Assembly: GCA_039096225.1 (NCBI GenBank)
Contig: JBBPEB010000028.1
Location: 806,001 to 870,000 of the forward strand
Source: Blastocystis sp. Blastoise
Lineage: Eukaryota; Protista; Bigyra: Opalinata
DNA: 64,000 nucleotides
Direction of reading: 5' to 3'
Shown here: positions 17,397 through 61,337 of the stretch, one piece after another
Position numbering within the stretch: the stretch's first letter is position 1
Layout: the number at the start of each line of letters is the position of its first letter
Made by a program: the position numbers and the translations under genes
Notes under the pieces: generated by a model
Seen by the model: only the letters and a program-made list of their open reading frames with translations
Told to the model about the DNA's origin: nothing
Databases searched by the model: none

Positions 17397-18615
17397 ATGA
17401 ATACTTCTCTCTACTTTAATATGAGTATGAAAAGAAGATTATGCATTCTATCACTAATAATCTTCATGTTGTGTAGTCCAATAACTAATGCAATCAGTAT
17501 ATATTTTTTATGTGTAATATATTCTTGTTTCTTGGATCACAAGAAATAAGTTATATTCCTTATCAGAATACAATAGAAATCATTTTCTACATCATTTATT
17601 CTTTAATATATAGATATAGATAAATCTGAAGATTCAGATGATATGATGAGCATCGACGATATTATGAGAAAGAATACAACTGAGTCTTTAAACAATTTAA
17701 GACATCTTCAAGGTATTTTTATTATTTTTGTTATTGTTTTATTATATATTTACTATTAGATGTTGACAAGAGTGATTATTTTCTAGTATATGGAATTCCA
17801 GTTATGAAAAACAATGTATATATATATGTTTTTTCTTATTTAAATATAAATTTTATTTATAAATAAACAGGATGCGTTGGTGAATCAGATTCGAACTAAA
17901 GTTTATGCTTCTATCAGTTATATTCAGCAACAATATAATATTAAGATAGTTATCTATACGAAGATTGAAGGAGCTTTCTTTAAACCGGAATTCAAACAAT
18001 TTACAGTTGTTAATCATTTTAAGTATATATATATATATATTATTATTATTGGTATTCATTATATATAATATATTTTTATTAAAGGACGAATTCCCTTGGT
18101 TATCCTTTAGTAACATCTCTCTTGGAGGATATGCGATCCAAATGGACTTCTGCTTATTATGGGATTCTATCCCCAGAAACATTTCAATCTTCTACTCTTA
18201 TACATACACTTCTTTCTATTAAGAATTCTATGTCCAAAGAAAGAATACTTAGAAAGGTATATATATATATAGATATAGATATATATATATATAGAATATG
18301 TTAGTTGGGCATCGTCATTTAGTACCAGCCAATCAAATTCAAATGAATTATATAACACAATTCGATTACGATCTTCATGTATCTAATCTTTGTACGGAGG
18401 ACAATGAAGATAATTCATTCACTTTTGTATTTATATATGCTTATATATTTATTTTTATCTTCTTTTCTATATATATATAGGATTTCTTCATCTTCTCTAA
18501 AAATGCTGATTTATCGGAATTGTGTCCCATCGCGTACGGAGAACCGTACGTTGAACGTCTATTAACATCGTATTGCTTTTATAAGAATATTCAAGTTATT
18601 GATGTCTCTACTACG

Positions 18616-42445: not shown

Positions 42446-42512
<67 letters not shown>

Positions 42513-43200
42513 CTCTCTACATAATTCTTCTAATAATATAGTATAATGTCATCATTTGATTCTATATATATATATAGAATTACTTCTTGTAATAAATGAG
42601 GATATTGATCAATGATATTTTAAAGTATAAATAGTTATATAATTATATATATATATCTAGTGATATATACCAAGATATATATAAATTAAAGATCAAATAA
42701 TATATATTTGAAGTTGTAAAGTAAATCCAAAATGATTAAGTATATATATATATATATAAAATTATTTTTATTATAATTAAATAAATTTATATATATATAG
42801 TATAGAAAGAAAATTGATGATTGTATATCTATAATGTTAAAAGTTGTAAAATAGTATATTAAGAAAGAAATGTTAATTGAGAATAAAAAAGAATTGATGT
42901 GAATTATAAAAGTAATATATATATATGGTATGATGAAGCTATATAGAATGAGATGATGAGTTTATTTGTAGAAGAAGAAAAGTTGATCAATATATATATA
43001 TAAGGTTATATATAAATGAATAGAAACAGAGTAAGTATATAATATATAAAGTCAAATAAAGAGATAGAGAAGAATAAGAAGTTAATAAGAATAAGAGATA
43101 CCCAAATAGAATCCTAGAGAGATTACAAACAAAGTATATATATATATATATTACATCTTTAAAAACAGTTCTTCTATAGATAAATAAAATCAATTGATTT
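41672..43200 (+). pseudogene. Decayed multi-exon gene of unknown family, running into the left palindrome arm
   Basis: ATG 41672, a series of GT-AG introns and protein-like segments (WDIDISDRLDHSVHKKGVIYNFLLR|RDLEVIKDNKTLQVIMEKYQKQF) broken by many stops; 3' limit unclear. Confidence 0.55.
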
Positions 43201-45263
43201 TATTTTGTTTTAAAATATATACTACACCCTTCAATAATATAAAAAGTATATATATATATATAGATTATATCAAAATATATATATTATATATATATATAGA
43301 AAAAATTCATAATAATTTATAAAATTCAAATAAATATTAATATAGAAAAGATTACATAGTTTTCGTATAATATATAGTTATTTATTTTTAATATATTTAA
43401 AAAATATATGAATATGTTAACAATATATATATTTTCTTATTAATATAAAAATATTTTCATTATATATTTGTTGATATTATTTATATAGTTGATTATAATT
43501 GAATTATTATCATTTATAAACTATATATAATTAATTATGTATTATTTATTCTTAATACTTGCTATATATACAACAAATCAGTTTTATTTTTATTATTATA
43601 TTTATATATATATATAAAATATAATCAATATCTTAATGTGATTATATATAAATATTATTATTTTAAAATATATTTTAGTTAATTAATTTGTTTTATTTAT
43701 TTTGAATTTATTTAAAGAATACTAATAAAATGTGATTTATTGCTTAAATAATTAAAAAATAATAATAAATATAATTCCATTTGATTTTAAAACAAACAAA
43801 CTAGTTGACTATTTCAATTGTATTAATATATTGATTAATATAATATTCAGATGAATCTAACAGTATACTCTTTTGTAACTCAATTGTTTGCTAATAATAC
43901 TAAAGAAGAAGAAAGAATAGAAAATGAAAAATGTTGTGATCTATATTATTAAATTATACAATATATCTTTTATATTATTGTGATTTTGATACTATATATA
44001 ATAATAAATAAATGATATCATATAATATTCTTCTTAATGTTCAATATATATATATATTTGAAATAAGTTTATAAATAAATTTAAAGATTTAATAAATATT
44101 AAACAAATACGAAAATATACTTTATATATATAGAATATGATTATAATAATAATATACTTAAAATAATATCATGAATTATTGGAGATTCCTTAATTGATAG
44201 ATATTTGTATTAAGAATGATCTATAAAATGAAATGTTAATTTTATTATTTTAATATAGAAAATAAACTATTATTAATATAAATAAAGATAATATATTAAT
44301 TATTTTAATTATATTTTATATAATTATAAAAATATTATAATATAATACAAACTATATATATATATATAAATAAGAAAATATACAACTAATCCACAATTTC
44401 TATTGACTTGAATAGAATATATATATATATATATATAAGAATATTTATAATAGAATTCTTTATTTATATACTTTGACACGTTGATTTTTTTTATTGTCGT
44501 GTTTTACTTTTTAACTTTTTAATTTATCTCTATGTTGCTAATATACTCTATATATACTGCTATTCTATGTTAAATCACTAAAAAATAATATTTTTTGATA
44601 ATATTTTTTTGTCGTGTTTAGATGACTACTATCATCATATGACTATATTGTGATTTTGAAATATAAAAAAGTATTAAATACTTAATCATTTACAAAATAG
44701 CAATTCTTTAATTCAATATTTATATAAAAAATATTTTAAAAATTAATTTAAAATCACGGGGATAAATAAAATTTCTAGCGAATTTCGAAAAGAATATTCA
44801 AAAAACAAAAAAATGTCGCTATTTTTTAAAAAATCATGAGAAAATTATGAATAAAGAAATGATAATAGCATTAATTTTTAATTATTTTTGTATTTTAATG
44901 TTTTAATTTATAATAAATCTCATTTGATTTATTAATTATATCAATATTATGTTTTTATAAGACAAATATACTTTCAATTACTATAATTTTCGAAAAAATA
45001 TTTTTTTTGTTTGACAATTATATTCAATAAATTGACTTAAATGACATAATTACATTTTATAATGAAACTTAAACTAAAAATCAATATTATCTTCAGATGT
45101 TAATTGAAGATGTCAGTGATTATTTTCAAAATAACAATTTTTTAATATAATTATGAGTTATAAAAACAATTTAAGATGTATATAAACAAAAAATATAAAA
45201 TAATTTTAGAGTTTGTTCAAAATGTGTGATCTTTGTTATTCATAAATTTATATATAATAATAA

Positions 45264-45307
<44 letters not shown>

Positions 45308-47104
45308 AAAATTAATAATTATTTATGAATTTAATTACTTATTAATAAACTAAATGTAAATACATTAGAAAACATAAATTTTTAAAAATATATTTTCAAA
45401 TAAACTATTTTAATCATCTTTAGTTCATTTCTTTTTTAAACTATCTTTATTTAATAAAATCTATTTTTATATAGATAGAATAAATGTATATAATATGTTT
45501 TTAAAAGTAAATTATAATTATCACTCTTTACTCTTAAATTAATTTTTAATAATTTTATTTAATTATATAATAAATATCATTTTAATCGTTTTAAGAGTGT
45601 TATAAACAAAAAAAATTATATAAGAAGAATGACCTGTCAATTAATTGTTGTCTTTTTCAAGTGCTATTTTCATAAAATAATGTCAGTTTCTTTTTAAAAT
45701 GAATAAAATATAATAAAAATAAAAATTTTATTTATTTAAAAATATATATATATATAAAAGAAGATAAAAAATAAGAAAACACAATAAATATTGAGAATTG
45801 ACTGAAATTTCATTTTTTAAATAAAGAATAGGATGATTTTTTCTGAATATTTCTCTTTCGATCTTGACTTTATTTTTATTATAATTCATTTAAAATGTTA
45901 TATATAAATAGATAAATGAATATTGTTAAAAATACTACATTTTTATACATATAAAAGACAAATTCCTTTTAACATGTTACATCATGTTACAAATAATAGT
46001 ATAAAGAAATCTTTAAAATAATTATTTCATTGTAATATAAATTATATCTAAAAGCTATTTTGAAAATTTGAGTTTAAAATAAGATGACAAAAGAATCATC
46101 TGTTTTACATTTGTCATTGTTTTGTCAGTTTTAAAATCTTATTTATTTAATTAAAATTTTGTTTTTTATTAATTATTAATAAATTAAAAATAAAATAGTT
46201 ATTTTTTATTCTCTTTAATAAATAAAATCGAAAAGAAATATTGTGTTTCTTTCATACTTTCATGATTATTATTTGTTTCTCTCTTAATATTTGTTAATTT
46301 TTTTTTAAGAAAAAGGATTATTTTAAAAATAAGTATTATGCTTTCTAAAGAGATTAAGTGCGACTTTTAAGAGTATAAAACATTTTTATAGAAATAATTT
46401 TGGCAAAACAAAACAAAAAGTGACGAGATTTCTCTTGCAAACATACTAGTGAAAAGATAACAGACTCATTATCTGAATATCTATAAAAGAATCAAATCTC
46501 TTATGAGAATAAATAACTTGACATATCTGTTTTTACTTTTTATGATCAGAATATAAATTTGTAAAGATTCAAATAATTCTTTATTTTGAATGATTCTATA
46601 AGTTATAAGATAGATAATATATTTAAAATATAGTCAATAAGTCAAATAAAATTTTTTTTTGTCAATTGAAAAGTTTGATACGTTGTCTTTTTAAAAAATA
46701 ATGTTTAAGAAACATGATTAAAAAATATATTAAAACTATTTATAAATATGTCAAAGATACATTTAAAAAATAACGAAAAACTTTGAAAAGAAAGGATGTT
46801 TGTGATCTCATCACGTATATTTATAAGAATTCGATCATGTTCTTCATATGACTGGCAATATATGCCATTAATTTTATCTCAAATAGAGAATCTCGATGTT
46901 TTCTTAAGTTTTGGGCCTTTATAAATAGGTCTTTATTCATCAATACTCTTTTTTTGAAACACAAAATACTCTATTTCTAATATGATTGGATTATTTTTTA
47001 AATAGTAGAAACATATAATTTTTTTTGAAATAAACCAAGAAACATGATTTTTAACACAAAAATACACAAAATTTATTTATTTTCTTGATTATCAAAAAAT
47101 AATA

Positions 47105-47952
47105 ATGCCTATTATTCAGTGTCAATTCTTCACTTCAGTATCTCTTGAAAAATGTTGAATTTGTGAAAGTCTTTTCTTGTTGTGAAAATAAAAATATTTT
47201 AATTTTATTTTTAATTTTTGATTTAGAAAATGAAGCATTTTGGTTTTGCTGTTCGTGTCGTGAGACTTCATGGGAAGTTCAGTCTTCGTAAGAGACTGAA
47301 TGTAACCATGTCATCGATGAAGCGACCTATGAAGAAGTATTGGCACTTATTCAAGCGCCAATTATTTCAAAGTATATACATATATATATATATTATTTAT
47401 ATTAATTATTATTGTTTTTTTTTAATTATTATTATTTTTTGCTTATATATTGTTTATATTAATTATTATTATATTTTTTAATTATATATTATATATATAT
47501 ATTATTATACTATATATATTTATATAGGATCCCTTTTGTTGGTGAAGATGTTTTTATATTTGGTTCTTTTCATATACAAGAACATCTTCAGCTGGCTCAG
47601 TATTGGACAGAAGAGTCCAGACAGACCTGCTATCTTGAAAAAGGTTTGTAAAGGTTCTGTCTGCTCTTCTAAGAAGCATCATTCTTGTAAAAAACGTGTT
47701 TCCAAAAAATCCAATACTGGTGAGAATGATACTGTAAAAGATGATGATGTTAAAGACAATACTGTGAAAGATGATGACGTTAAAGAAGATGATGTTAAAG
47801 ATGATACTGTGAAAGTTGATGACGTTAAAAATAATACTATGAAAGATGATGATTGTAAACATGATGATGTTAAAGAAGATGATGTTAAAGAAGATGATGT
47901 TAAAGAAGATGATGTTAAAGAAGATGATGTTAAAGAAGATGATGTTCAATAA
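47105..47952 (+). other. Spliced gene or pseudogene ending in an acidic KEDDV repeat (left copy)
   Basis: Higher-GC exon-like blocks separated by GT-AG introns; open frame from ATG 47230 across the intron into the repeat until TAA 47950-47952. Confidence 0.5.
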
Positions 47953-48332
47953 GATGATGTTCAATAAGATGATGATCAATAAGATGATGTTAAAGAAGAC
48001 GATGTTAAAGATGATGTTGTGAGAGATGATGATGTTAAAGATGATGTTGTGAAAGACGATGACGTTAAAGATGATACTGTGAAAGATGATGATGTTAAAG
48101 AAGATACTATGAAGTATCATTTTTCACAGTATTATTTTGCACATCATCTTCTTTAACATCATCTTCTTTAACATCATCTTCTTTAACATCATCATGTTTA
48201 CAATCATCATCTTTCATAGTATTATTTTTAACGTCATCAACTTTCACAGTATCATCTTTAACATCATCTTCTTTAACGTCATCATCTTTCACAGTATTGT
48301 CTTTAACATCATCATCTTTTACAGTATCATTC
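47725..48332. repeat. 15-bp tandem repeat (GATGATGTTAAAGAA) arrays meeting tail-to-tail at ~48110
   Basis: Directly visible; orientation switches at GATACTatgaAGTATC (48103-48118). Confidence 0.93.
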
Positions 48333-48951
48333 TCACCAGTATTGGATTTTTTGGAAACACGTTTTTTACAAGAATGATGCTTCTTAGAAGAGCAGACAGA
48401 ACCTTTACAAACCTTTTTCAAGATAGCAGGTCTGTCTGGACTCTTCTGTCCAATACTGAGCCAGCTGAAGATGTTCTTGTATATGAAAAGAACCAAATAC
48501 AAAAACATCTTCACCAACAAAAGGGATCCTATATAAATATATATAGTATAATAATATATATATATAATATATAATTAAAAAATATAATAATAATTAATAT
48601 AAACAATATATAAGCAAAAAATAATAATAATTAAAAAAAAACAATAATAATTAATATAAATAATATATATATATATGTATATACTTTGAAATAATTGGCG
48701 CTTGAATAAGTGCCAATACTTCTTCATAGGTCGCTTCATCGATGACATGGTTACATTCAGTCTCTTACGAAGACTGAACTTCCCATGAAGTCTCACGACA
48801 CGAACAGCAAAACCAAAATGCTTCATTTTCTAAATCAAAAATTAAAAATAAAATTAAAATATTTTTATTTTCACAACAAGAAAAGACTTTCACAAATTCA
48901 ACATTTTTCAAGAGATACTGAAGTGAAGAATTGACACTGAATAATAGGCAT
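48107..48951 (-). other. Inverted copy of the KEDDV-repeat gene (right copy)
   Basis: Reverse complement of the left copy with fewer repeat units; stop TAG 48107-48109 lies across the palindrome centre. Confidence 0.5.
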
Positions 48952-50748
48952 TATTATTTTTTGATAATCAAGAAAATAAATAAATTTTGTGTATTTTTGT
49001 GTTAAAAATCATGTTTCTTGGTTTATTTCAAAAAAAATTATATGTTTCTACTATTTAAAAAATAATCCAATCATATTAGAAATAGAGTATTTTGTGTTTC
49101 AAAAAAAGAGTATTGATGAATAAAGACCTATTTATAAAGGCCCAAAACTTAAGAAAACATCGAGATTCTCTATTTGAGATAAAATTAATGGCATATATTG
49201 CCAGTCATATGAAGAACATGATCGAATTCTTATAAATATACGTGATGAGATCACAAACATCCTTTCTTTTCAAAGTTTTTCGTTATTTTTTAAATGTATC
49301 TTTGACATATTTATAAATAGTTTTAATATATTTTTTAATCATGTTTCTTAAACATTATTTTTTAAAAAGACAACGTATCAAACTTTTCAATTGACAAAAA
49401 AAAATTTTATTTGACTTATTGACTATATTTTAAATATATTATCTATCTTATAACTTATAGAATCATTCAAAATAAAGAATTATTTGAATCTTTACAAATT
49501 TATATTCTGATCATAAAAAGTAAAAACAGATATGTCAAGTTATTTATTCTCATAAGAGATTTGATTCTTTTATAGATATTCAGATAATGAGTCTGTTATC
49601 TTTTCACTAGTATGTTTGCAAGAGAAATCTCGTCACTTTTTGTTTTGTTTTGCCAAAATTATTTCTATAAAAATGTTTTATACTCTTAAAAGTCGCACTT
49701 AATCTCTTTAGAAAGCATAATACTTATTTTTAAAATAATCCTTTTTCTTAAAAAAAAATTAACAAATATTAAGAGAGAAACAAATAATAATCATGAAAGT
49801 ATGAAAGAAACACAATATTTCTTTTCGATTTTATTTATTAAAGAGAATAAAAAATAACTATTTTATTTTTAATTTATTAATAATTAATAAAAAACAAAAT
49901 TTTAATTAAATAAATAAGATTTTAAAACTGACAAAACAATGACAAATGTAAAACAGATGATTCTTTTGTCATCTTATTTTAAACTCAAATTTTCAAAATA
50001 GCTTTTAGATATAATTTATATTACAATAAAATAATTATTTTAAAGATTTCTTTATACTATTATTTGTAACATGATGTAACATGTTAAAAGGAATTTGTCT
50101 TTTATATGTATAAAAATGTAGTATTTTTAACAATATTCATTTATCTATTTATATATAACATTTTAAATGAATTATAATAAAAATAAAGTCAAGATCGAAA
50201 GAGAAATATTCAGAAAAAATCATCCTATTCTTTATTTAAAAAATGAAATTTCAGTCAATTCTCAATATTTATTGTGTTTTCTTATTTTTTATCTTCTTTT
50301 ATATATATATATATTTTTAAATAAATAAAATTTTTATTTTTATTATATTTTATTCATTTTAAAAAGAAACTGACATTATTTTATGAAAATAGCACTTGAA
50401 AAAGACAACAATTAATTGACAGGTCATTCTTCTTATATAATTTTTTTTGTTTATAACACTCTTAAAACGATTAAAATGATATTTATTATATAATTAAATA
50501 AAATTATTAAAAATTAATTTAAGAGTAAAGAGTGATAATTACAATTTACTTTTAAAAACATATTATATACATTTATTCTATCTATATAAAAATAGATTTT
50601 ATTAAATAAAGATAGTTTAAAAAAGAAATGAACTAAAGATGATTAAAATAGTTTATTTGAAAATATATTTTTAAAAATTTATGTTTTCTAATGTATTTAC
50701 ATTTAGTTTATTAATAAGTAATTAAATTCATAAATAATTATTAATTTT

Positions 50749-50794
<46 letters not shown>

Positions 50795-53510
50795 TTATTA
50801 TTATATATAAATTTATGAATAACAAAGATCACACATTTTGAACAAACTCTAAAATTATTTTATATTTTTTGTTTATATACATCTTAAATTGTTTTTATAA
50901 CTCATAATTATATTAAAAAATTGTTATTTTGAAAATAATCACTGACATCTTCAATTAACATCTGAAGATAATATTGATTTTTAGTTTAAGTTTCATTATA
51001 AAATGTAATTATGTCATTTAAGTCAATTTATTGAATATAATTGTCAAACAAAAAAAATATTTTTTCGAAAATTATAGTAATTGAAAGTATATTTGTCTTA
51101 TAAAAACATAATATTGATATAATTAATAAATCAAATGAGATTTATTATAAATTAAAACATTAAAATACAAAAATAATTAAAAATTAATGCTATTATCATT
51201 TCTTTATTCATAATTTTCTCATGATTTTTTAAAAAATAGCGACATTTTTTTGTTTTTTGAATATTCTTTTCGAAATTCGCTAGAAATTTTATTTATCCCC
51301 GTGATTTTAAATTAATTTTTAAAATATTTTTTATATAAATATTGAATTAAAGAATTGCTATTTTGTAAATGATTAAGTATTTAATACTTTTTTATATTTC
51401 AAAATCACAATATAGTCATATGATGATAGTAGTCATCTAAACACGACAAAAAAATATTATCAAAAAATATTATTTTTTAGTGATTTAACATAGAATAGCA
51501 GTATATATAGAGTATATTAGCAACATAGAGATAAATTAAAAAGTTAAAAAGTAAAACACGACAATAAAAAAAATCAACGTGTCAAAGTATATAAATAAAG
51601 AATTCTATTATAAATATTCTTATATATATATATATATATATTCTATTCAAGTCAATAGAAATTGTGGATTAGTTGTATATTTTCTTATTTATATATATAT
51701 ATATAGTTTGTATTATATTATAATATTTTTATAATTATATAAAATATAATTAAAATAATTAATATATTATCTTTATTTATATTAATAATAGTTTATTTTC
51801 TATATTAAAATAATAAAATTAACATTTCATTTTATAGATCATTCTTAATACAAATATCTATCAATTAAGGAATCTCCAATAATTCATGATATTATTTTAA
51901 GTATATTATTATTATAATCATATTCTATATATATAAAGTATATTTTCGTATTTGTTTAATATTTATTAAATCTTTAAATTTATTTATAAACTTATTTCAA
52001 ATATATATATATATTGAACATTAAGAAGAATATTATATGATATCATTTATTTATTATTATATATAGTATCAAAATCACAATAATATAAAAGATATATTGT
52101 ATAATTTAATAATATAGATCACAACATTTTTCATTTTCTATTCTTTCTTCTTCTTTAGTATTATTAGCAAACAATTGAGTTACAAAAGAGTATACTGTTA
52201 GATTCATCTGAATATTATATTAATCAATATATTAATACAATTGAAATAGTCAACTAGTTTGTTTGTTTTAAAATCAAATGGAATTATATTTATTATTATT
52301 TTTTAATTATTTAAGCAATAAATCACATTTTATTAGTATTCTTTAAATAAATTCAAAATAAATAAAACAAATTAATTAACTAAAATATATTTTAAAATAA
52401 TAATATTTATATATAATCACATTAAGATATTGATTATATTTTATATATATATATAAATATAATAATAAAAATAAAACTGATTTGTTGTATATATAGCAAG
52501 TATTAAGAATAAATAATACATAATTAATTATATATAGTTTATAAATGATAATAATTCAATTATAATCAACTATATAAATAATATCAACAAATATATAATG
52601 AAAATATTTTTATATTAATAAGAAAATATATATATTGTTAACATATTCATATATTTTTTAAATATATTAAAAATAAATAACTATATATTATACGAAAACT
52701 ATGTAATCTTTTCTATATTAATATTTATTTGAATTTTATAAATTATTATGAATTTTTTCTATATATATATATAATATATATATTTTGATATAATCTATAT
52801 ATATATATATACTTTTTATATTATTGAAGGGTGTAGTATATATTTTAAAACAAAATAAAATCAATTGATTTTATTTATCTATAGAAGAATTTGTTTGTAA
52901 TCTCTCTAGGATTCTATTTGGGTATCTCTTATTCTTATTAACTTCTTATTCTTCTCTATCTCTTTATTTGACTTTATATATTATATACTTACTCTGTTTC
53001 TATTCATTTATATATAACCTTATATATATATATTGATCAACTTTTCTTCTTCTACAAATAAACTCATCATCTCATTCTATATAGCTTCATCATACCATAT
53101 ATATATATTACTTTTATAATTCACATCAATTCTTTTTTATTCTCAATTAACATTTCTTTCTTAATATACTATTTTACAACTTTTAACATTATAGATATAC
53201 AATCATCAATTTTCTTTCTATACTATATATATATAAATTTATTTAATTATAATAAAAATAATTTTATATATATATATATATACTTAATCATTTTGGATTT
53301 ACTTTACAACTTCAAATATATATTATTTGATCTTTAATTTATATATATCTTGGTATATATCACTAGATATATATATATAATTATATAACTATTTATACTT
53401 TAAAATATCATTGATCAATATCCTCATTTATTACAAGAAGTAATTCTATATATATATATAGAATCAAATGATGACATTATACTATATTATTAGAAGAATT
53501 ATGTAGAGAG

Positions 53511-53546
<36 letters not shown>

Positions 53547-53641
53547 GAGAAATATATATGTTATAATAAATACTATAAAAAGTATAAAAAAGAATAAAAT
53601 ATTAAAAAAAAACATAAAATGAACATAAAACTTGAATATAC

Positions 53642-54087
53642 TTTTTTAATATCTTTATTTTCGAAATATTTTTTAAAGTAATTAATAGTACCTTCTGATT
53701 CATCTAGATTATCTATCCATATTCGTGGGCCGTTGCCAAAATCATACTGAGGACCACAATAGATAGAAGCACAAATCAATTTACCATTTCCTATATAGAT
53801 AAATAGATAAATTTCTTATGAATAATAAAATAGTTTTATAAGCATACCTATAGGAGATTTATCCATATCGATATCACGAACTTCTGTATCACAAGCATGA
53901 TATTCATCTTTTAATTGCATCAACTAAGACAATAAAAGAATATTAACTTAAAAAATACTTGATTCACAACTTTCTCTGCAGTTTCCTTATTGTTGACAAT
54001 AGTAACTCCAGTTGCAGTTGCTATGAATCGATTCGACAATATATTTGATGAAATGAACAGCTTTTTGGTCAATAGCAACCTTAACAT
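53642..54087 (-). CDS. 5' fragment (118 aa, 3 exons) of POP-type organellar family A DNA polymerase
   Basis: Targeting-like MLRLLLTKKLF; HACDTEV (ExoI), GKLICASIYCGPQYDFGNG and WID..YFENKDIKK match plant/protist organellar Pol I; downstream exons absent from the window. Confidence 0.88.
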
Positions 54088-54316
54088 TGACTGTTCAATA
54101 ATCGTTAAGTATTATAATAGAGAGATAGGATAATGAAGTATATTAATTTATAATTAGTAGAGTAGTTGATAATCTGAATGTGAAGAACAATGGAATTATA
54201 ATAATATTCTGTTTCACAATTTTTTTGAATTTTGAAGAGAATTTAAAATTATAATCGAGAAACAAAAAAAAAACAACTTTTTTCTTTGATTTGCGTTTTT
54301 CGATTGAATAATTGTT

Positions 54317-57300
54317 ATGAGTGATAAAGGAGTGAATCCATTGAAAAGTATTATTTATAAACAAATCAATGGAGTAGATGCACCTCCACGAGAAAAAGGT
54401 ATTTTCAATCCCACTCAAAGAAAAGCTCCAGAAGAAACTCGTGGAAATCTCCCAAAGGCTCAGATGAGGTTTGCTCCAAGTTATAAAGTTGCTCCTACGA
54501 AATTTATGACACACAATGATGGAGCTGATGATAAGAATACTCTTTTGCATGTTCAGGATGTTCCTGACGTCGAAGGTGGTGTCAAGGATCTTATAGACAA
54601 GTTTGATAGAATTCAATCAACGACAAAACCTTTATTATCTGAAAATGACCGATTGAAACCTTCGTTATCCAGTACATTCTCAAATACATATTCAAATACA
54701 TATTCAAATACATATTCAAATACATATTCAAATACTCAGTCGTCAAAAGAGAATTCTTCGTTTTCGAAACAAACTATTCTATCTGAAGAACAAATCCCCA
54801 AAACCTCTGAAATATCTACTCCTGTGATTCCAAATAGGAATAATGGTCGTCAAATGGATAGTACTTGGCAACAACAAACTAAGAATTCATACAGTGAATC
54901 AATTCTTCCAAATAATAACAATTCTCAATCTTTATTTAATACATCTGTATTTATATTTATAGTTTATTATTAATATTTTTTTCATTTATTTTATTTTTAA
55001 ACATTTTTTTTTATAAACTATTAATATATATATATATTATATTTTATATATATTATTCTATTTAGATGCCAGCAAGAGATAGTGGTATGTTCAATTCTTC
55101 AGTGAATAACGTTCTTCTAGATAAGAATAATAAGGATAATAATAATAGTTCATTTCTTTCGAATTCGATTCCTTCTTTTTCCAGACCTTCTTTAATATAT
55201 ACTAAGAATACAAATAAAACACAATTAGATGTATATCCCAGTATATATGAAGATTCAAGTTCATCTTTTCACAATTTATCTTCTCTCTCTCCTAAAGATA
55301 CAAATACGTTATTTCCTTCAGAAATCACAAGTCAACCTGACACTATTAATGATTCCTTTCTCTCTGTTTCTTCATCTCCATCTAAACCTATATCACAAAC
55401 TAGTATATATAATATAAAATAGGCTATTTTTTATTGTAATAATCATTTTATTATTATTATTATATTATTGTTTTTATTATTATATTATATTATATAGAGC
55501 AATCTACTTCTACAGATGGATATATATCTCCTCCTCCTTTGTCATTGCCATTAAAATCACATAATCAAGGAATAATACCTTCTCAGTCAAATATATCTAT
55601 ATCTACAACTATTCATCCTTCTTCTCCTCCTTCATCTGTTATCTCAGAAGATGTAACGAGAAGAACATTACGTTTTAGTAGTGTTTCTTCTGAATCACAT
55701 CCTTCTAGTCTCTCTAATAATAACAATAACAATAACAATAATAATAATAATAATTCAACAAATATTAATAATAATAATACAGCAAATTCAGCGATTATAG
55801 TTACTCAGCCAGAAGAACAGTCTTCTCCTATTATTACTCCTTCCTCTTCTCCTATCATTACTCCTTCTTCTTCTCCTATCATTACTCCTTCTCCTTCTCC
55901 TATTATTACTCCTTCTCCTACTCCAAAGAAATTATCTTCTACTACTTCAATGAATGTATATACACAGAATTCAAATGCTTCTCTTTCATCTACTTACCCT
56001 AATACTATAAATAACTCACAATCTACTCTTTCTTCTTCAAATATACAAAATACTCAAAAATCTCTACTGAATTCATCTCAAAATACAAGTCAATCACAAT
56101 ACAATGTGCAATTAAATACACAAAATACATCGCAATCCTCTATAGATAAAGATTCTTTGTCTTCAAAAGTCTCTTTCTCTCAAACTCCTTCTAATACAAT
56201 AAAAAGAACATCGACTATAAATTCATTATTATCTTCAGAAAGTTCTATTGATGACACATCATTCTTTGAAGATGAAACAGATGATGAACAACATATAACT
56301 ACTATTACTCCTTCTCCTTCTTCTATTAATAATAATAATAATAATATTAATAATAGTAATTCTATTAATAATAATAATATTTCTCAAGATATAAATAATA
56401 AAACACTCTCTATATCTGAAGATCGCAATTCTACATTATTAAATCAACAATTAAATAGTATTTTGAATAACAGTACTCTTAGTAATACAAAAAGTCCTCT
56501 CTCTCCTTCTCAACCTCAACCCTCAAAACCTATATCTTCATCTATTAATACGTCTAATAGTATAGATACAAACTTTTCTTTCTTATCAAATTCTTTAGAC
56601 GACTCTATGAATAACACAAATAATAATAATAATAATATTTCTCAAGTAGTTTCATCTGATATTCCTTCTTCAATACCTTTAAGTTCAGTAACAACACGAA
56701 GAGGAACATCCTTTTATCATAATTATTCTCCTTCTAATAATACTGCTTCTCCTTCTAATAATACTGTTTCTCCTTCTAATAATACTATATCTCCATCAAA
56801 TATATCGAAATCTCCTGTATCTCTTCTAAATAATAAACAAAATATATTACAAAATAATACTACTCTTTCTTCTTCACCAAACACACGTGACTCAGAAATA
56901 AGTCAATCATTTGATTCGCTACTTAATATTACTATTCCTGTAGATCCATCTCCTCCTAAATATTCTAAACATATATCTATTGATCCTATTTCACCTTCTC
57001 AAACAATAACTTCTTCTTATACTAAAGATATCTCTAACAATAATACACAATCTATTCCTTCTCCTTCAAGTATTCAACAAGAAAATCATTCTCTAAACGC
57101 CAAACAATCTATCGATATAAATATATCTAATGATTCGTCATATATTCCTCCTCAAGATGGAACACAATCGTTAATTGACCAATCAATCGATTCACCTTCA
57201 TTCGATACATGTGATAGTGATGATAATATATCTGTTCATAATATGAATATGTCTAAATATATCACTTTAAATGAATCCTATAATGGTATAGGTATATATG

Positions 57301-57795
57301 AAGATTCTCTTTATAATCCTATTCAACAAACTATTCAATCTAATTTCATGAATAATAGTATATATATATATATTTTATATATTATTTATTATTCTATATA
57401 GATCCATTAGAATATATTCATCAAACAATTATTCTTTATTATACACAACAAATACCTTTTTTACATAGTATATATATTTATATAATAATATATAATTATT
57501 ATTCTATATATATATAGATTCAAGTTCAGAATATATACATAGTTTAGAAGAATGTTTTCCTTCCTATAATTCATTATTTACAAATATTCAACTATCCAAT
57601 GTATTACAACCTTCACCCTTCTATATATATACATTAAGTATACTCTGGGATCAATCGAAAGATACTCAAACTTCTACTACTCCATTATGGAAAACATATA
57701 CAAAACAATGCTTAGAAAAATATAAATTAAATAATTTTATTTATGGGTATACTTATATTTCTGAAGAAAATGGAAATTTTATTTACCAACTTTAA
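54317..57795 (+). CDS. Large Ser/Asn/Pro-rich protein of unknown function with small globular C-terminus
   Basis: Long open exons (ORFs of 218, 118 and 620 aa) joined by GT-AG introns; internal repeats TYSN, SSPIITPS, SPSNNT; TAA 57793-57795. Confidence 0.75.
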
Positions 57796-58170
57796 TTTGT
57801 TTTCAATATCATCATGTGTACTATCTGTATTTTTAGTAGTCTTATAGATTTATTCTGATATAGCTTTCTTTATTATATATTTTATTATTTTTTTGTATTG
57901 ATTTATTTTATTTAGTTGTTTTTTTAATCAAAGAAGTTTTATCTTGTTATAGAAATGTTTATGATTTGCTGAAAGCAAAGAAGCTAATGAGTATTCAAGA
58001 AAACAATAAAAATAATAAACAAAAAATAGAACTTTTAAAAGAGGGAAAAAGACCCTATCAGTAAGGCGTGAGTGACAGTATTCGTGATTAATTTATAGAA
58101 AAGTTTATAAGAATTGAAATAATCATAAAAATCGAAAAATGAGAAAAATAGATGAATTTAAATAGCATTA

Positions 58171-60995: not shown

Positions 60996-61275
60996 TAATA
61001 ATATTTCAGATGATAATAATAACACTCTACTAAAACGATCGTCTACGTCATCATTACACTCGTATTCCCACGGGAATCGGACACTTTCTACAGCAATTAA
61101 TTCCTCTCAGCCAAAGCAAACTACGTCTTTAGATTCCCGCGGTTCTCCTACACTTCCCAAGTTATTTTTCTCTCCTCCTCCTGATTATTTCTTTACAGGT
61201 TGTGTCTTTTATTTCCAAGGAGACTCTATATGGAAATCGAAATATAATATTATCATTATGAATCAGGGAGGAATG

Positions 61276-61337
<62 letters not shown>

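What the first reader, a model, noticed from the sequence alone, without database searches (positions are those of the whole stretch)
43134..43168. A complete 35-nt GT-AG intron is present in one palindrome arm and precisely absent from the other
Seen: the left arm reads GATTACAAACAAA|gtatatatatatatatattacatctttaaaaacag|TTCTTCTATAG. The mirrored right arm (junction 52889/52890) reads GATTACAAACAAA|TTCTTCTATAG. The indel is exactly GT...AG, matches the local intron size and style, and has no flanking direct repeat to explain a slippage deletion. Otherwise I saw only a few transitions and repeat-length changes between the arms. Inference: very recent precise intron loss (spliced-RNA/cDNA-templated repair or conversion) or gain, in an apparently dead gene, while neighbouring intron-like segments are retained. 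Alternative: polishing or assembly with RNA-derived reads.
Basis: partly seen in the sequence, partly recalled or inferred. Interest (0 to 1): 0.8.

Follow-up and report, generated by a model that had tools for sequence, protein, structure and literature searches.

The report
Intron-shaped 35-base gap between palindrome arms
One arm of an 11-kb DNA palindrome in a tortoise-gut Blastocystis lacks exactly one 35-base, intron-shaped segment that the other arm keeps; this is probably a very recent precise intron removal of a kind that recurs in this genome, but no reads could be examined to prove splicing.

Summary
The arms (42482-47915 and 48141-53541) differ only by three transitions, one TA unit and one 35-nt indel (43134-43168; junction 52889/52890). 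The indel has a single possible placement, GT...AG, and no flanking repeat.

Chance is low: 13 of 5326 35-mers in the arm are GT..AG on either strand, and only the segment itself reaches its splice-site score.

The genome matches Blastocystis sp. Rus-B, which was assembled and polished with genomic DNA only. That speaks against RNA-read polishing.

I checked two other near-identical inverted gene pairs. SDHA differs by 2 exact short introns and Era by 4. Six of the seven large non-microsatellite indels I examined are exact introns; the seventh is a tandem duplication.

The unique 18 nt of the segment occur nowhere else in the genome, so loss from the right arm is more parsimonious than gain.

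I found no reading frame across the site, so the "dead gene" is unsupported. A truncated, promoter-bearing POP polymerase duplicate does point into the right arm in the sense orientation, and may supply the spliced RNA (inference).

Verdict: probable precise intron-type loss, a new member of a known kind.

The parts
43134..43168 (+). The 35-nt GT...AG segment, present only in the left arm: a consensus donor GTATATATAT, (TA)8, a unique 18-nt tail TTACATCTTTAAAAACAG, and a weak CAG acceptor
   Evidence: Splice-site score: donor at the 71st percentile of 82 high-confidence introns, acceptor at the 13th, total at the 33rd. The unique tail occurs once in the genome.
52889..52890 (-). Junction in the right arm where the 35 nt are exactly absent (ACAAACAAA|TTCTTCTATAG on the minus strand)
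42482..47915 (+). Left palindrome arm. The outer 2.8 kb (42482-45265) are identical to the right arm except for the 35-nt indel. GC is 9-20% from 42.5 to 47.1 kb, with no reading frame above chance.
48141..53541 (-). Right palindrome arm. Its outer edge is a (TA)n tract that abuts the truncated POP copy.
47916..48140 (.). Asymmetric centre made of 15-nt (DDVKE-type) coding repeats. This is the only part of the palindrome with a reading frame above chance (about 47.4-48.03 kb).
53642..54087 (-). Exons 1-3 of a truncated duplicate of the organellar family-A DNA polymerase (POP) gene. Exon 1 is 54087-53959, intron 1 is 53958-53924 (35 nt), exon 2 is 53923-53848, intron 2 is 53847-53791 (57 nt), and exon 3 is 53790-53642. 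The donor of intron 3 is at 53641, and its original acceptor was lost at the (TA)n edge of the palindrome. Transcription from here would run into the right arm in the orientation in which the 35-nt segment reads GT...AG.
   Evidence: Searches give the sequence and frames; exon 3 is 100% identical in protein to C15:855010-855156. DNA_pol_A matches lie downstream in C15 only; homology ends at about 53514-53541.
53514..57803 (-). 4.3-kb segmental duplicate (94-98% identical) of C15:851065-855283. It carries the POP 5' part, the 230-nt divergent promoter region and two upstream genes.

Best explanation
The 35 nt are a short spliceosomal-type intron of a non-coding or chimeric transcript. They were cut out precisely from the right arm very recently, by repair or recombination templated by the spliced RNA or its cDNA, while the left arm kept the ancestral state. 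Shown: the excision is exact, GT...AG, unambiguous and without microhomology. The 5' end is the genome's donor consensus. The same kind of exact difference in short introns (37-55 nt) recurs between other near-identical inverted duplicates of this genome. The segment has no donor copy elsewhere, which favours deletion. Inferred: the RNA source is the truncated POP gene copy. This copy keeps its promoter region and first three exons, has lost the acceptor of its third intron, and must transcribe about 750 nt further into the right arm, on the strand where the segment reads GT...AG. That would explain why the right arm is the one that lost it. Splicing itself was not observed.
For: The indel is exact and can be placed only one way. 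Chance of GT..AG ends is 0.24%, and about 0.03-0.04% for a splice score this good. The intron consensus from 82 high-confidence introns is GTATATAT...TATATAG with lengths from 35 nt upward; POP intron 1 is also 35 nt. The SDHA inverted copies differ by two adjacent exact introns of 45 and 55 nt inside a conserved coding sequence. The Era inverted copies differ by four reciprocal exact GT..AG introns of 37, 48, 44 and 39 nt. In about 15 kb of other near-identical duplicates, every large indel that was not a microsatellite or tandem duplication was an intron. The unique 18 nt occur once in 33 Mb, with no local template of 11 nt or more. The truncated POP copy, with its promoter, points into the right arm. 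The published assembly used no RNA reads.
Against: No reading frame spans the site: 218 nt against a control median of about 278 nt, and the flanking 'exon' has stops in all frames. Intron status therefore rests on shape alone. The acceptor is weak: C at -3 occurs in 5% of introns and the upstream stretch is A-rich. A consensus TTCTTCTATAG acceptor lies only 11 nt downstream, at 43179. G(TA)nG microsatellites mimic introns throughout this DNA. Intron-like neighbours of 36 and 80 nt between the POP exons and the site are retained in both arms. No RNA or DNA reads could be laid, so transcription, splicing and the arm assignment are unverified. Across a whole-genome scan, a chance GT..AG indel somewhere is not excluded.
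Confidence: 0.5

Rival explanations
1. The indel is an ordinary DNA-level deletion or insertion in non-coding AT-rich DNA, for example end-joining after a break in a fragile palindrome. Its ends happen to be GT and AG. No RNA is involved.
For: No coding signal spans the site. The local + strand is G-rich and C-poor, which raises GT and AG frequencies. The acceptor is weak, and a better one 11 nt downstream was not used. The finding was selected from thousands of notes on this genome, so a coincidence of about 0.2% somewhere is conceivable.
Against: The chance of GT..AG ends is only 0.24%, and about 0.03% at this splice score. There is no microhomology at the ends. I saw no other large indel outside microsatellites, tandem duplications and introns in about 15 kb of duplicates at 1-6% divergence. 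One such event in arms that are 0.06% diverged is therefore itself improbable.
Confidence: 0.2
2. The difference is not a true difference between the arms. Either it is a heterozygous allele of a diploid genome that the assembler or polisher placed in one arm only, or it is a consensus error in a nearly perfect repeat assembled from R9 Nanopore reads.
For: The matching published assembly is a collapsed diploid made with Flye --meta from R9 reads and polished with racon, PolyPolish and POLCA. The paper reports a strong diploid k-mer signal. Arms that are 99.94% identical are hard to polish separately. No reads could be examined.
Against: A consensus error would not be expected to remove 35 nt that include 18 nt of complex unique sequence, exactly at GT..AG. 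Three transitions also distinguish the arms, so the polishers did keep the arms apart. The site lies only about 650 nt from unique flanks on either side, easily spanned by long reads. The allelic version would move the event but not change its nature.
Confidence: 0.17
3. The segment is an intron gain, or another insertion, in the left arm: a de novo insertion of a GT...AG segment such as break-repair filler DNA, an introner-like element or reverse splicing.
For: The Era pair shows reciprocal differences, which pure loss explains only with several independent events. All polymorphic introns seen are short (35-55 nt), as young introns might be.
Against: The segment's unique 18 nt have no other copy in the genome, and no template of 11 nt or more in the window. 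There is no target-site duplication. The seven polymorphic introns share no sequence beyond AT-rich low complexity.
Confidence: 0.06
4. A DNA-level excision system that does not depend on splicing removes short AT-rich segments bounded by GT..AG, somewhat like the excision of internal eliminated sequences in ciliates. This would explain why a non-genic site is affected.
For: The only support is the apparent lack of a gene at this site, together with the high frequency of exact short-intron differences in this genome.
Against: No such system is known in stramenopiles. All the other verified cases lie in expressed-looking coding genes, where RNA-mediated loss is sufficient. A plausible transcript source exists here, the truncated POP copy.
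Confidence: 0.03

Closest known systems
Precise intron loss through spliced RNA or cDNA (reverse-transcriptase-mediated model of Fink 1987; transcript-RNA-templated break repair shown in yeast, Keskin et al. 2014; cited from my own knowledge)
   Same: The GT...AG segment is removed exactly, the flanking bases are unchanged, and there is no microhomology. It occurs between very recent duplicates, as in the SDHA and Era pairs of the same genome.
   Different: The site interrupts no recognisable reading frame. The RNA would be a non-coding run-on of a truncated gene copy. Only one intron-like segment is lost, while upstream ones are kept. Neither reverse transcription nor splicing was observed.
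Intron presence/absence polymorphisms described in Daphnia, Drosophila, Arabidopsis and fungi such as Zymoseptoria (from my own knowledge)
   Same: Two otherwise near-identical sequences differ by exactly one intron.
   Different: Here the two forms are arms of one palindrome (or possibly alleles), in a stramenopile gut protist with 23% GC and (TA)n-rich introns. The paper describing these genomes does not report this phenomenon (PMC12129017 discusses only intron length).
Microhomology-mediated or end-joining genomic deletion of introns (model proposed for nematodes and other metazoans; from my own knowledge)
   Same: It is a deletion of intron size at the DNA level.
   Different: That model predicts short direct repeats at the ends and frequent imprecision. 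Here there is no repeat and the ends are exact.
Introners, transposon-derived introns (PMC9860276; title and abstract seen)
   Same: They produce intron presence/absence differences between recent copies.
   Different: Introners are multi-copy families, usually with target-site duplications. This segment is unique in the genome and has none.
Arm-to-arm gene conversion in large palindromes, as in the human Y-chromosome ampliconic palindromes (from my own knowledge)
   Same: The arms are 99.94% identical, with a 2.8-kb tract of perfect identity around the indel. This is consistent with ongoing homogenisation or a very young age.
   Different: Conversion would erase or spread a 35-nt difference, so the indel must post-date the last homogenisation. 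Conversion itself does not explain GT..AG ends.

Membership tests
U2-type spliceosomal intron of this genome | GT at the 5' end and AG at the 3' end, with unambiguous placement | tested here: met
   the gap cannot be shifted in either direction.
U2-type spliceosomal intron of this genome | Extended 5' splice-site consensus (GTATATAT) | tested here: met
   One search gives the consensus from 82 introns. One search places the donor score at the 71st percentile of true introns.
U2-type spliceosomal intron of this genome | 3' splice-site consensus (TATATAG, T at -3) | tested here: inconclusive
   The acceptor is AAAACAG. C at -3 occurs in 4 of 82 introns, and the score is at the 13th percentile. 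A stronger TATAG lies 11 nt downstream. However, the CAG is the first AG after the donor.
U2-type spliceosomal intron of this genome | Length within the genome's intron range | tested here: met
   35 nt is the second shortest of 82 introns (range 26-150, median about 88). It equals POP intron 1 and is close to the polymorphic introns of 37-55 nt.
U2-type spliceosomal intron of this genome | Lies in a transcription unit, and its removal restores or continues a reading frame | tested here: not met
This does not exclude an intron of a non-coding transcript.
U2-type spliceosomal intron of this genome | Spliced junction observed in RNA | not testable with these tools
   Only one candidate run was found (X1, share 0.10).
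RNA/cDNA-mediated precise intron loss | Exact removal with the flanking sequence unchanged | tested here: met
   there are no other differences within 2.1 kb on either side.
RNA/cDNA-mediated precise intron loss | Affected copy is transcribed in the sense orientation | tested here: inconclusive
   A promoter-bearing truncated POP copy points into the right arm on the correct strand. Transcription was not measured.
RNA/cDNA-mediated precise intron loss | Adjacent introns lost together, or a 3' bias | tested here: not met
   Intron-like segments of 36 and 80 nt upstream (42625-42660 and 42721-42800) are retained in both arms. Whether these are real introns is unknown.
Microhomology or slippage deletion | Direct repeat at the two ends, or an indel made of repeat units | tested here: not met
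   There is no flanking repeat. Only 17 of the 35 nt are (TA)n.
Introner or mobile-element insertion | Further copies in the genome and a target-site duplication | tested here: not met
   There is one copy in 33 Mb, allowing up to 2 mismatches, and no duplication at the ends.

The most novel reading that the evidence does not exclude
This Blastocystis lineage has an unusually active process that precisely removes (or adds) short introns in recently duplicated DNA. The 35-nt event shows that process acting on a non-coding run-on transcript of a truncated gene inside a break-prone palindrome. It would be RNA-templated repair caught in a 2.8-kb tract of otherwise perfect identity, with the untranscribed arm serving as a built-in 'before' copy. 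More radically, and much less likely (about 3%), the excision is a splicing-independent DNA process.
Probability: 0.45. Interest if true: 0.6.

Novelty: new member of a known kind. Interest (0 to 1): 0.42.

Why it matters
Precise intron loss is usually inferred from comparisons of distant species. Here the 'before' and 'after' states would sit 10 kb apart in one molecule, differing by almost nothing else. Together with the SDHA and Era pairs that I verified, this suggests that tortoise-gut Blastocystis turns over short introns quickly. That would make the mechanism (spliced RNA as a repair template) directly testable with existing reads and with PCR. It also bears on why human-gut Blastocystis ended up with uniform 30-nt introns. 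If the site proves untranscribed, the case instead warns that G(TA)nG microsatellites in very AT-rich genomes imitate introns.

Tried and rejected
**Reads.**
- The look-up of sequencing runs gave one run (X1, share 0.10, possibly RNA).
No read evidence exists.
Later queries began at 44340 or ended at 44295, and scripts masked them.
- Loci L024 and L025, which fetched automatically, cover those places and were not used.

**A third copy to set the polarity.**
- Own-genome DNA searches of 42900-43400 and 44340-48140 found only the two arms plus low-complexity matches.

**Independent assemblies.**
- The look-up of encoding contigs with the 218-aa flank ORF: not on record.

**A hidden gene at the site.**
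- ORF lists, a splice-aware longest-frame search on both strands with Markov controls, and Pfam on flank and centre ORFs all gave nothing.
The script reported only lengths and coordinates.

**The arm as continuation of the POP gene.**
- Rejected. The intact gene at C15 continues with a VWHNYSFD exon that is absent here, and homology stops at the (TA)n edge.

**Other rejected ideas.**
- Templated insertion: no donor.
- RNA-read polishing: the published methods used genomic DNA only.
- The paper's supplements are not held.
- Four hAT-like copies used as a base-rate control differ only in microsatellite length.

Full report
**1. Observation**

The left arm reads GATTACAAACAAA, then 35 nt (GTATATATATATATATATTACATCTTTAAAAACAG, 43134-43168), then TTCTTCTATAG. 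The right arm, read on the minus strand, joins GATTACAAACAAA directly to TTCTTCTATAG at 52890/52889.

The repeat finder shows the inverted repeat broken into three blocks exactly at this point. A global alignment sets the arms at 42482-47915 and 48141-53541. They surround an asymmetric centre of 15-nt coding repeats.

Inside the arms there are five differences:
- the 35-nt indel;
- one TA unit at 45266;
- transitions at 45514, 46028 and 47556.

The outer 2.8 kb are otherwise identical. The gap has only one possible placement, so its ends are truly GT and AG, and there is no flanking direct repeat.

**2. More than chance?**

| Test | Result |
|---|---|
| 35-nt windows in the arm that are GT..AG on either strand | 13 of 5326 (0.24%) |
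| Windows that fit GTA[AT]..[CT]AG | 2 of 5326 |
| Outer-arm windows, both strands, that reach the segment's splice-site score | 1 of 3540 (the segment itself) |

The scoring matrix came from 82 high-confidence introns of this genome. As a single test this is well beyond chance. The finding was, however, picked from thousands of notes on this genome, so one coincidence somewhere in the genome cannot be excluded.

**3. Organism and assembly**

- The window is contig C5:806001-870000 of a 33.34-Mb assembly in 34 contigs, at 23% GC.
- It has eukaryotic genes (protein kinase, ABC ATPase, BRCT) and the standard genetic code.
- Earlier notes of this scan call it a tortoise-gut Blastocystis.
- The figures match Blastocystis sp. 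Rus-B in PMC12129017: 33.3 Mb, 23.1% GC, 33 scaffolds.
- That paper reports longer and more variable introns in the tortoise isolates, and a diploid k-mer signal.
- Its assembly used Flye on R9 Nanopore genomic reads, polished with racon, PolyPolish and POLCA on Illumina genomic DNA.

Diploidy leaves open that the indel is allelic and was placed in one arm by the assembler.

**4. What lies around the site**

From 42.5 to 47.1 kb the arm is 9-20% GC. It is full of (TA)n and other low-complexity repeats.

ORFs there are short and low-complexity. The 83-nt stretch just upstream of the segment is closed in all three frames.

A splice-aware search for the longest reading frame, allowing GTA...AG introns of 30-150 nt, gave these results:

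| Region | Longest spliced frame | Markov controls |
|---|---|---|
| 42482-44295, + strand | 218 nt | 158-599 nt, median about 278 |
| 44336-46400 | not above the controls | 152-590 nt |
| Palindrome centre, about 47.4-48.03 kb | 470-485 nt | at most 287 nt |

The "apparently dead gene" therefore has no support beyond intron-like shapes. Two of those shapes, at 18 and 21 nt, are below the shortest credible introns and are simply G(TA)nG microsatellites.

**5. Intron style in this genome**

Eighty-two introns were recovered by joining long open frames across low-GC GT..AG segments.
- The consensus is GTATATAT...TATATAG.
- T occupies position -3 in 84% and C in 5%.
- Lengths in the set run from 26 to 150 nt, the upper limit of my search; one is 26 nt and the rest are 35 nt or longer, with a median of about 88 nt.
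- POP intron 1, 800 nt away, is 35 nt.

The segment's donor is consensus (71st percentile). Its acceptor AAAACAG is weak (13th percentile). The total score is at the 33rd percentile.

A better acceptor, TTCTTCTATAG, lies 11 nt further on. The CAG is nevertheless the first AG after the donor.

**6. Is exact intron presence/absence a real process here?**

Notes from other windows claimed several cases. I tested two of them.

*SDHA.* Two inverted copies on C18 (585693-589293 and 601238-604698, 97-100% identical across the blocks) differ by two adjacent segments of 45 and 55 nt. Both segments fall inside a conserved coding sequence, which reads through uninterrupted in the copy that lacks them (...[28 protein letters not shown]...).
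- The 55-nt segment is GT..AG.
- The 45-nt segment has a perfect GTATGT donor but ends in TG.

*Era.* Two inverted copies on C14 (95-100% identical) differ by four exact GT..AG segments of 37, 48, 44 and 39 nt. One is present only in copy A and three only in copy B.

*Controls.*
- The 4.3-kb POP-region duplicate (94-98% identical) and four 99%-identical hAT-like copies show only microsatellite and tandem-repeat length changes.
- Apart from one 42-nt tandem duplication in the Era pair, every large indel that is not a microsatellite is an exact intron: six of six, or seven with the present one.
- There is a caveat. In coding genes selection removes imprecise deletions, so this ratio overstates the case for non-coding DNA.
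- Even so, large non-repeat indels were absent from the non-coding parts I examined.

**7. Loss or gain**

The unique tail of the segment occurs once in 33 Mb, even with two mismatches allowed. The window holds no template of 11 nt or more. There is no target-site duplication. The arm has no third copy in the genome that could serve as an outgroup. A deletion in the right arm is therefore the more parsimonious reading.

**8. A possible source of the spliced RNA (inference)**

The right flank of the palindrome (53514-57803) duplicates C15:851065-855283.
- It carries the first three exons of the organellar family-A DNA polymerase gene on the minus strand (54087 to 53642).
- It carries the 230-nt region between that gene and its divergent neighbour.
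- Its exon 3 is identical in protein to the intact gene. The polymerase domain is found only at C15.
- Homology stops in intron 3, at the (TA)n tract that forms the outer edge of the right arm.
- The next exon of the intact gene (VWHNYSFD...) is missing here.

A transcript of this truncated copy therefore has an open donor at 53641 and no acceptor. It must run into the right arm on the minus strand. That is the strand on which the segment, about 750 nt further on, reads GT...AG. The arm that lies downstream of this promoter is the arm that lacks the segment.

This fits removal templated by a spliced RNA or its cDNA. It also explains how a site with no reading frame could be spliced. None of it was measured.

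**9. What could not be done**

- Only one public run was offered (X1, share 0.10, possibly RNA).
- I kept those 40 letters out of every later search and masked them in scripts.
- An exact-protein look-up for other assemblies found nothing.
- The paper's supplements are not held.

**10. Verdict**

My estimates for what it is:

| Reading | Probability |
|---|---|
| Precise removal of a short spliceosomal-type intron from the right arm, one instance of a turnover of short introns that I confirmed elsewhere in this genome | about 0.5 |
| Coincidental DNA deletion | about 0.2 |
| Allelic or consensus misassignment | about 0.17 |
| Gain in the left arm | about 0.06 |
| Splicing-independent excision | about 0.03 |

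The kind of event is known: intron presence/absence polymorphism and RNA-mediated intron loss. What is new is the organism, the palindrome setting and the non-coding context. Flank-anchored long genomic reads and the existing RNA-seq would settle it.

Noticed in passing
G000:C18:588296-588340 (locus L034), minus strand: The 45-nt SDHA intron that is present in one inverted copy and absent from the other has a perfect GTATGT donor but ends in TG, not AG. None of the three equivalent gap placements gives GT..AG. Either a TG acceptor is used, or this copy is splicing-defective.
   Followed up: partly
G000:C14:1190500-1196500 (L036) versus 1229200-1235200 (L037): Inverted Era GTPase duplicates (95-100% identical) differ by four exact GT..AG introns of 37, 48, 44 and 39 nt in a reciprocal pattern, plus one 42-nt tandem duplication. 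Exon identity is highest (99.5-100%) in the tract that holds the intron differences.
   Followed up: partly
Genome-wide: All seven polymorphic introns are short (35-55 nt), whereas the 82 high-confidence introns have a median of about 88 nt and reach at least 150 nt. Turnover seems to be concentrated on the shortest introns.
   Followed up: no
window 61275-61336 and 18257-18294; L014:1515-1620: Many real introns are almost pure G(TA)nG, down to 2% GC. A GTAG tetranucleotide that expands its TA would create exactly such a GT..AG segment. Microsatellite expansion is therefore a conceivable route to new introns, and a source of false intron look-alikes.
   Followed up: no
window 53514-57803 versus G000:C15:851065-855283: This 4.3-kb segmental duplicate (94-98% identical) includes two whole upstream genes and the first three exons of the organellar DNA polymerase gene. 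It is cut off in intron 3 at a (TA)n tract that is also the outer edge of the right palindrome arm.
   Followed up: yes
window 42482-45265 versus 50791-53541: All three substitutions between the arms lie in the inner half. The outer 2.8 kb are identical apart from the 35-nt indel. This suggests very recent formation or homogenisation of the outer part.
   Followed up: no
G000:C16:~659550-662385, C18, and C29 (two loci); loci L038-L045: Four hAT-like elements of 2.85 kb, about 99% identical, differ only in the lengths of (TA)n and (TAT)n tracts. They appear to be a recently active small hAT family, distinct from the 16-kb element noted by others.
   Followed up: partly
window 43169-43179: A consensus-like acceptor TTCTTCTATAG lies 11 nt downstream of the CAG that ends the 35-nt segment. 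With the same donor it would give a 46-nt intron with a higher splice score (14.8 against 12.5).
   Followed up: yes
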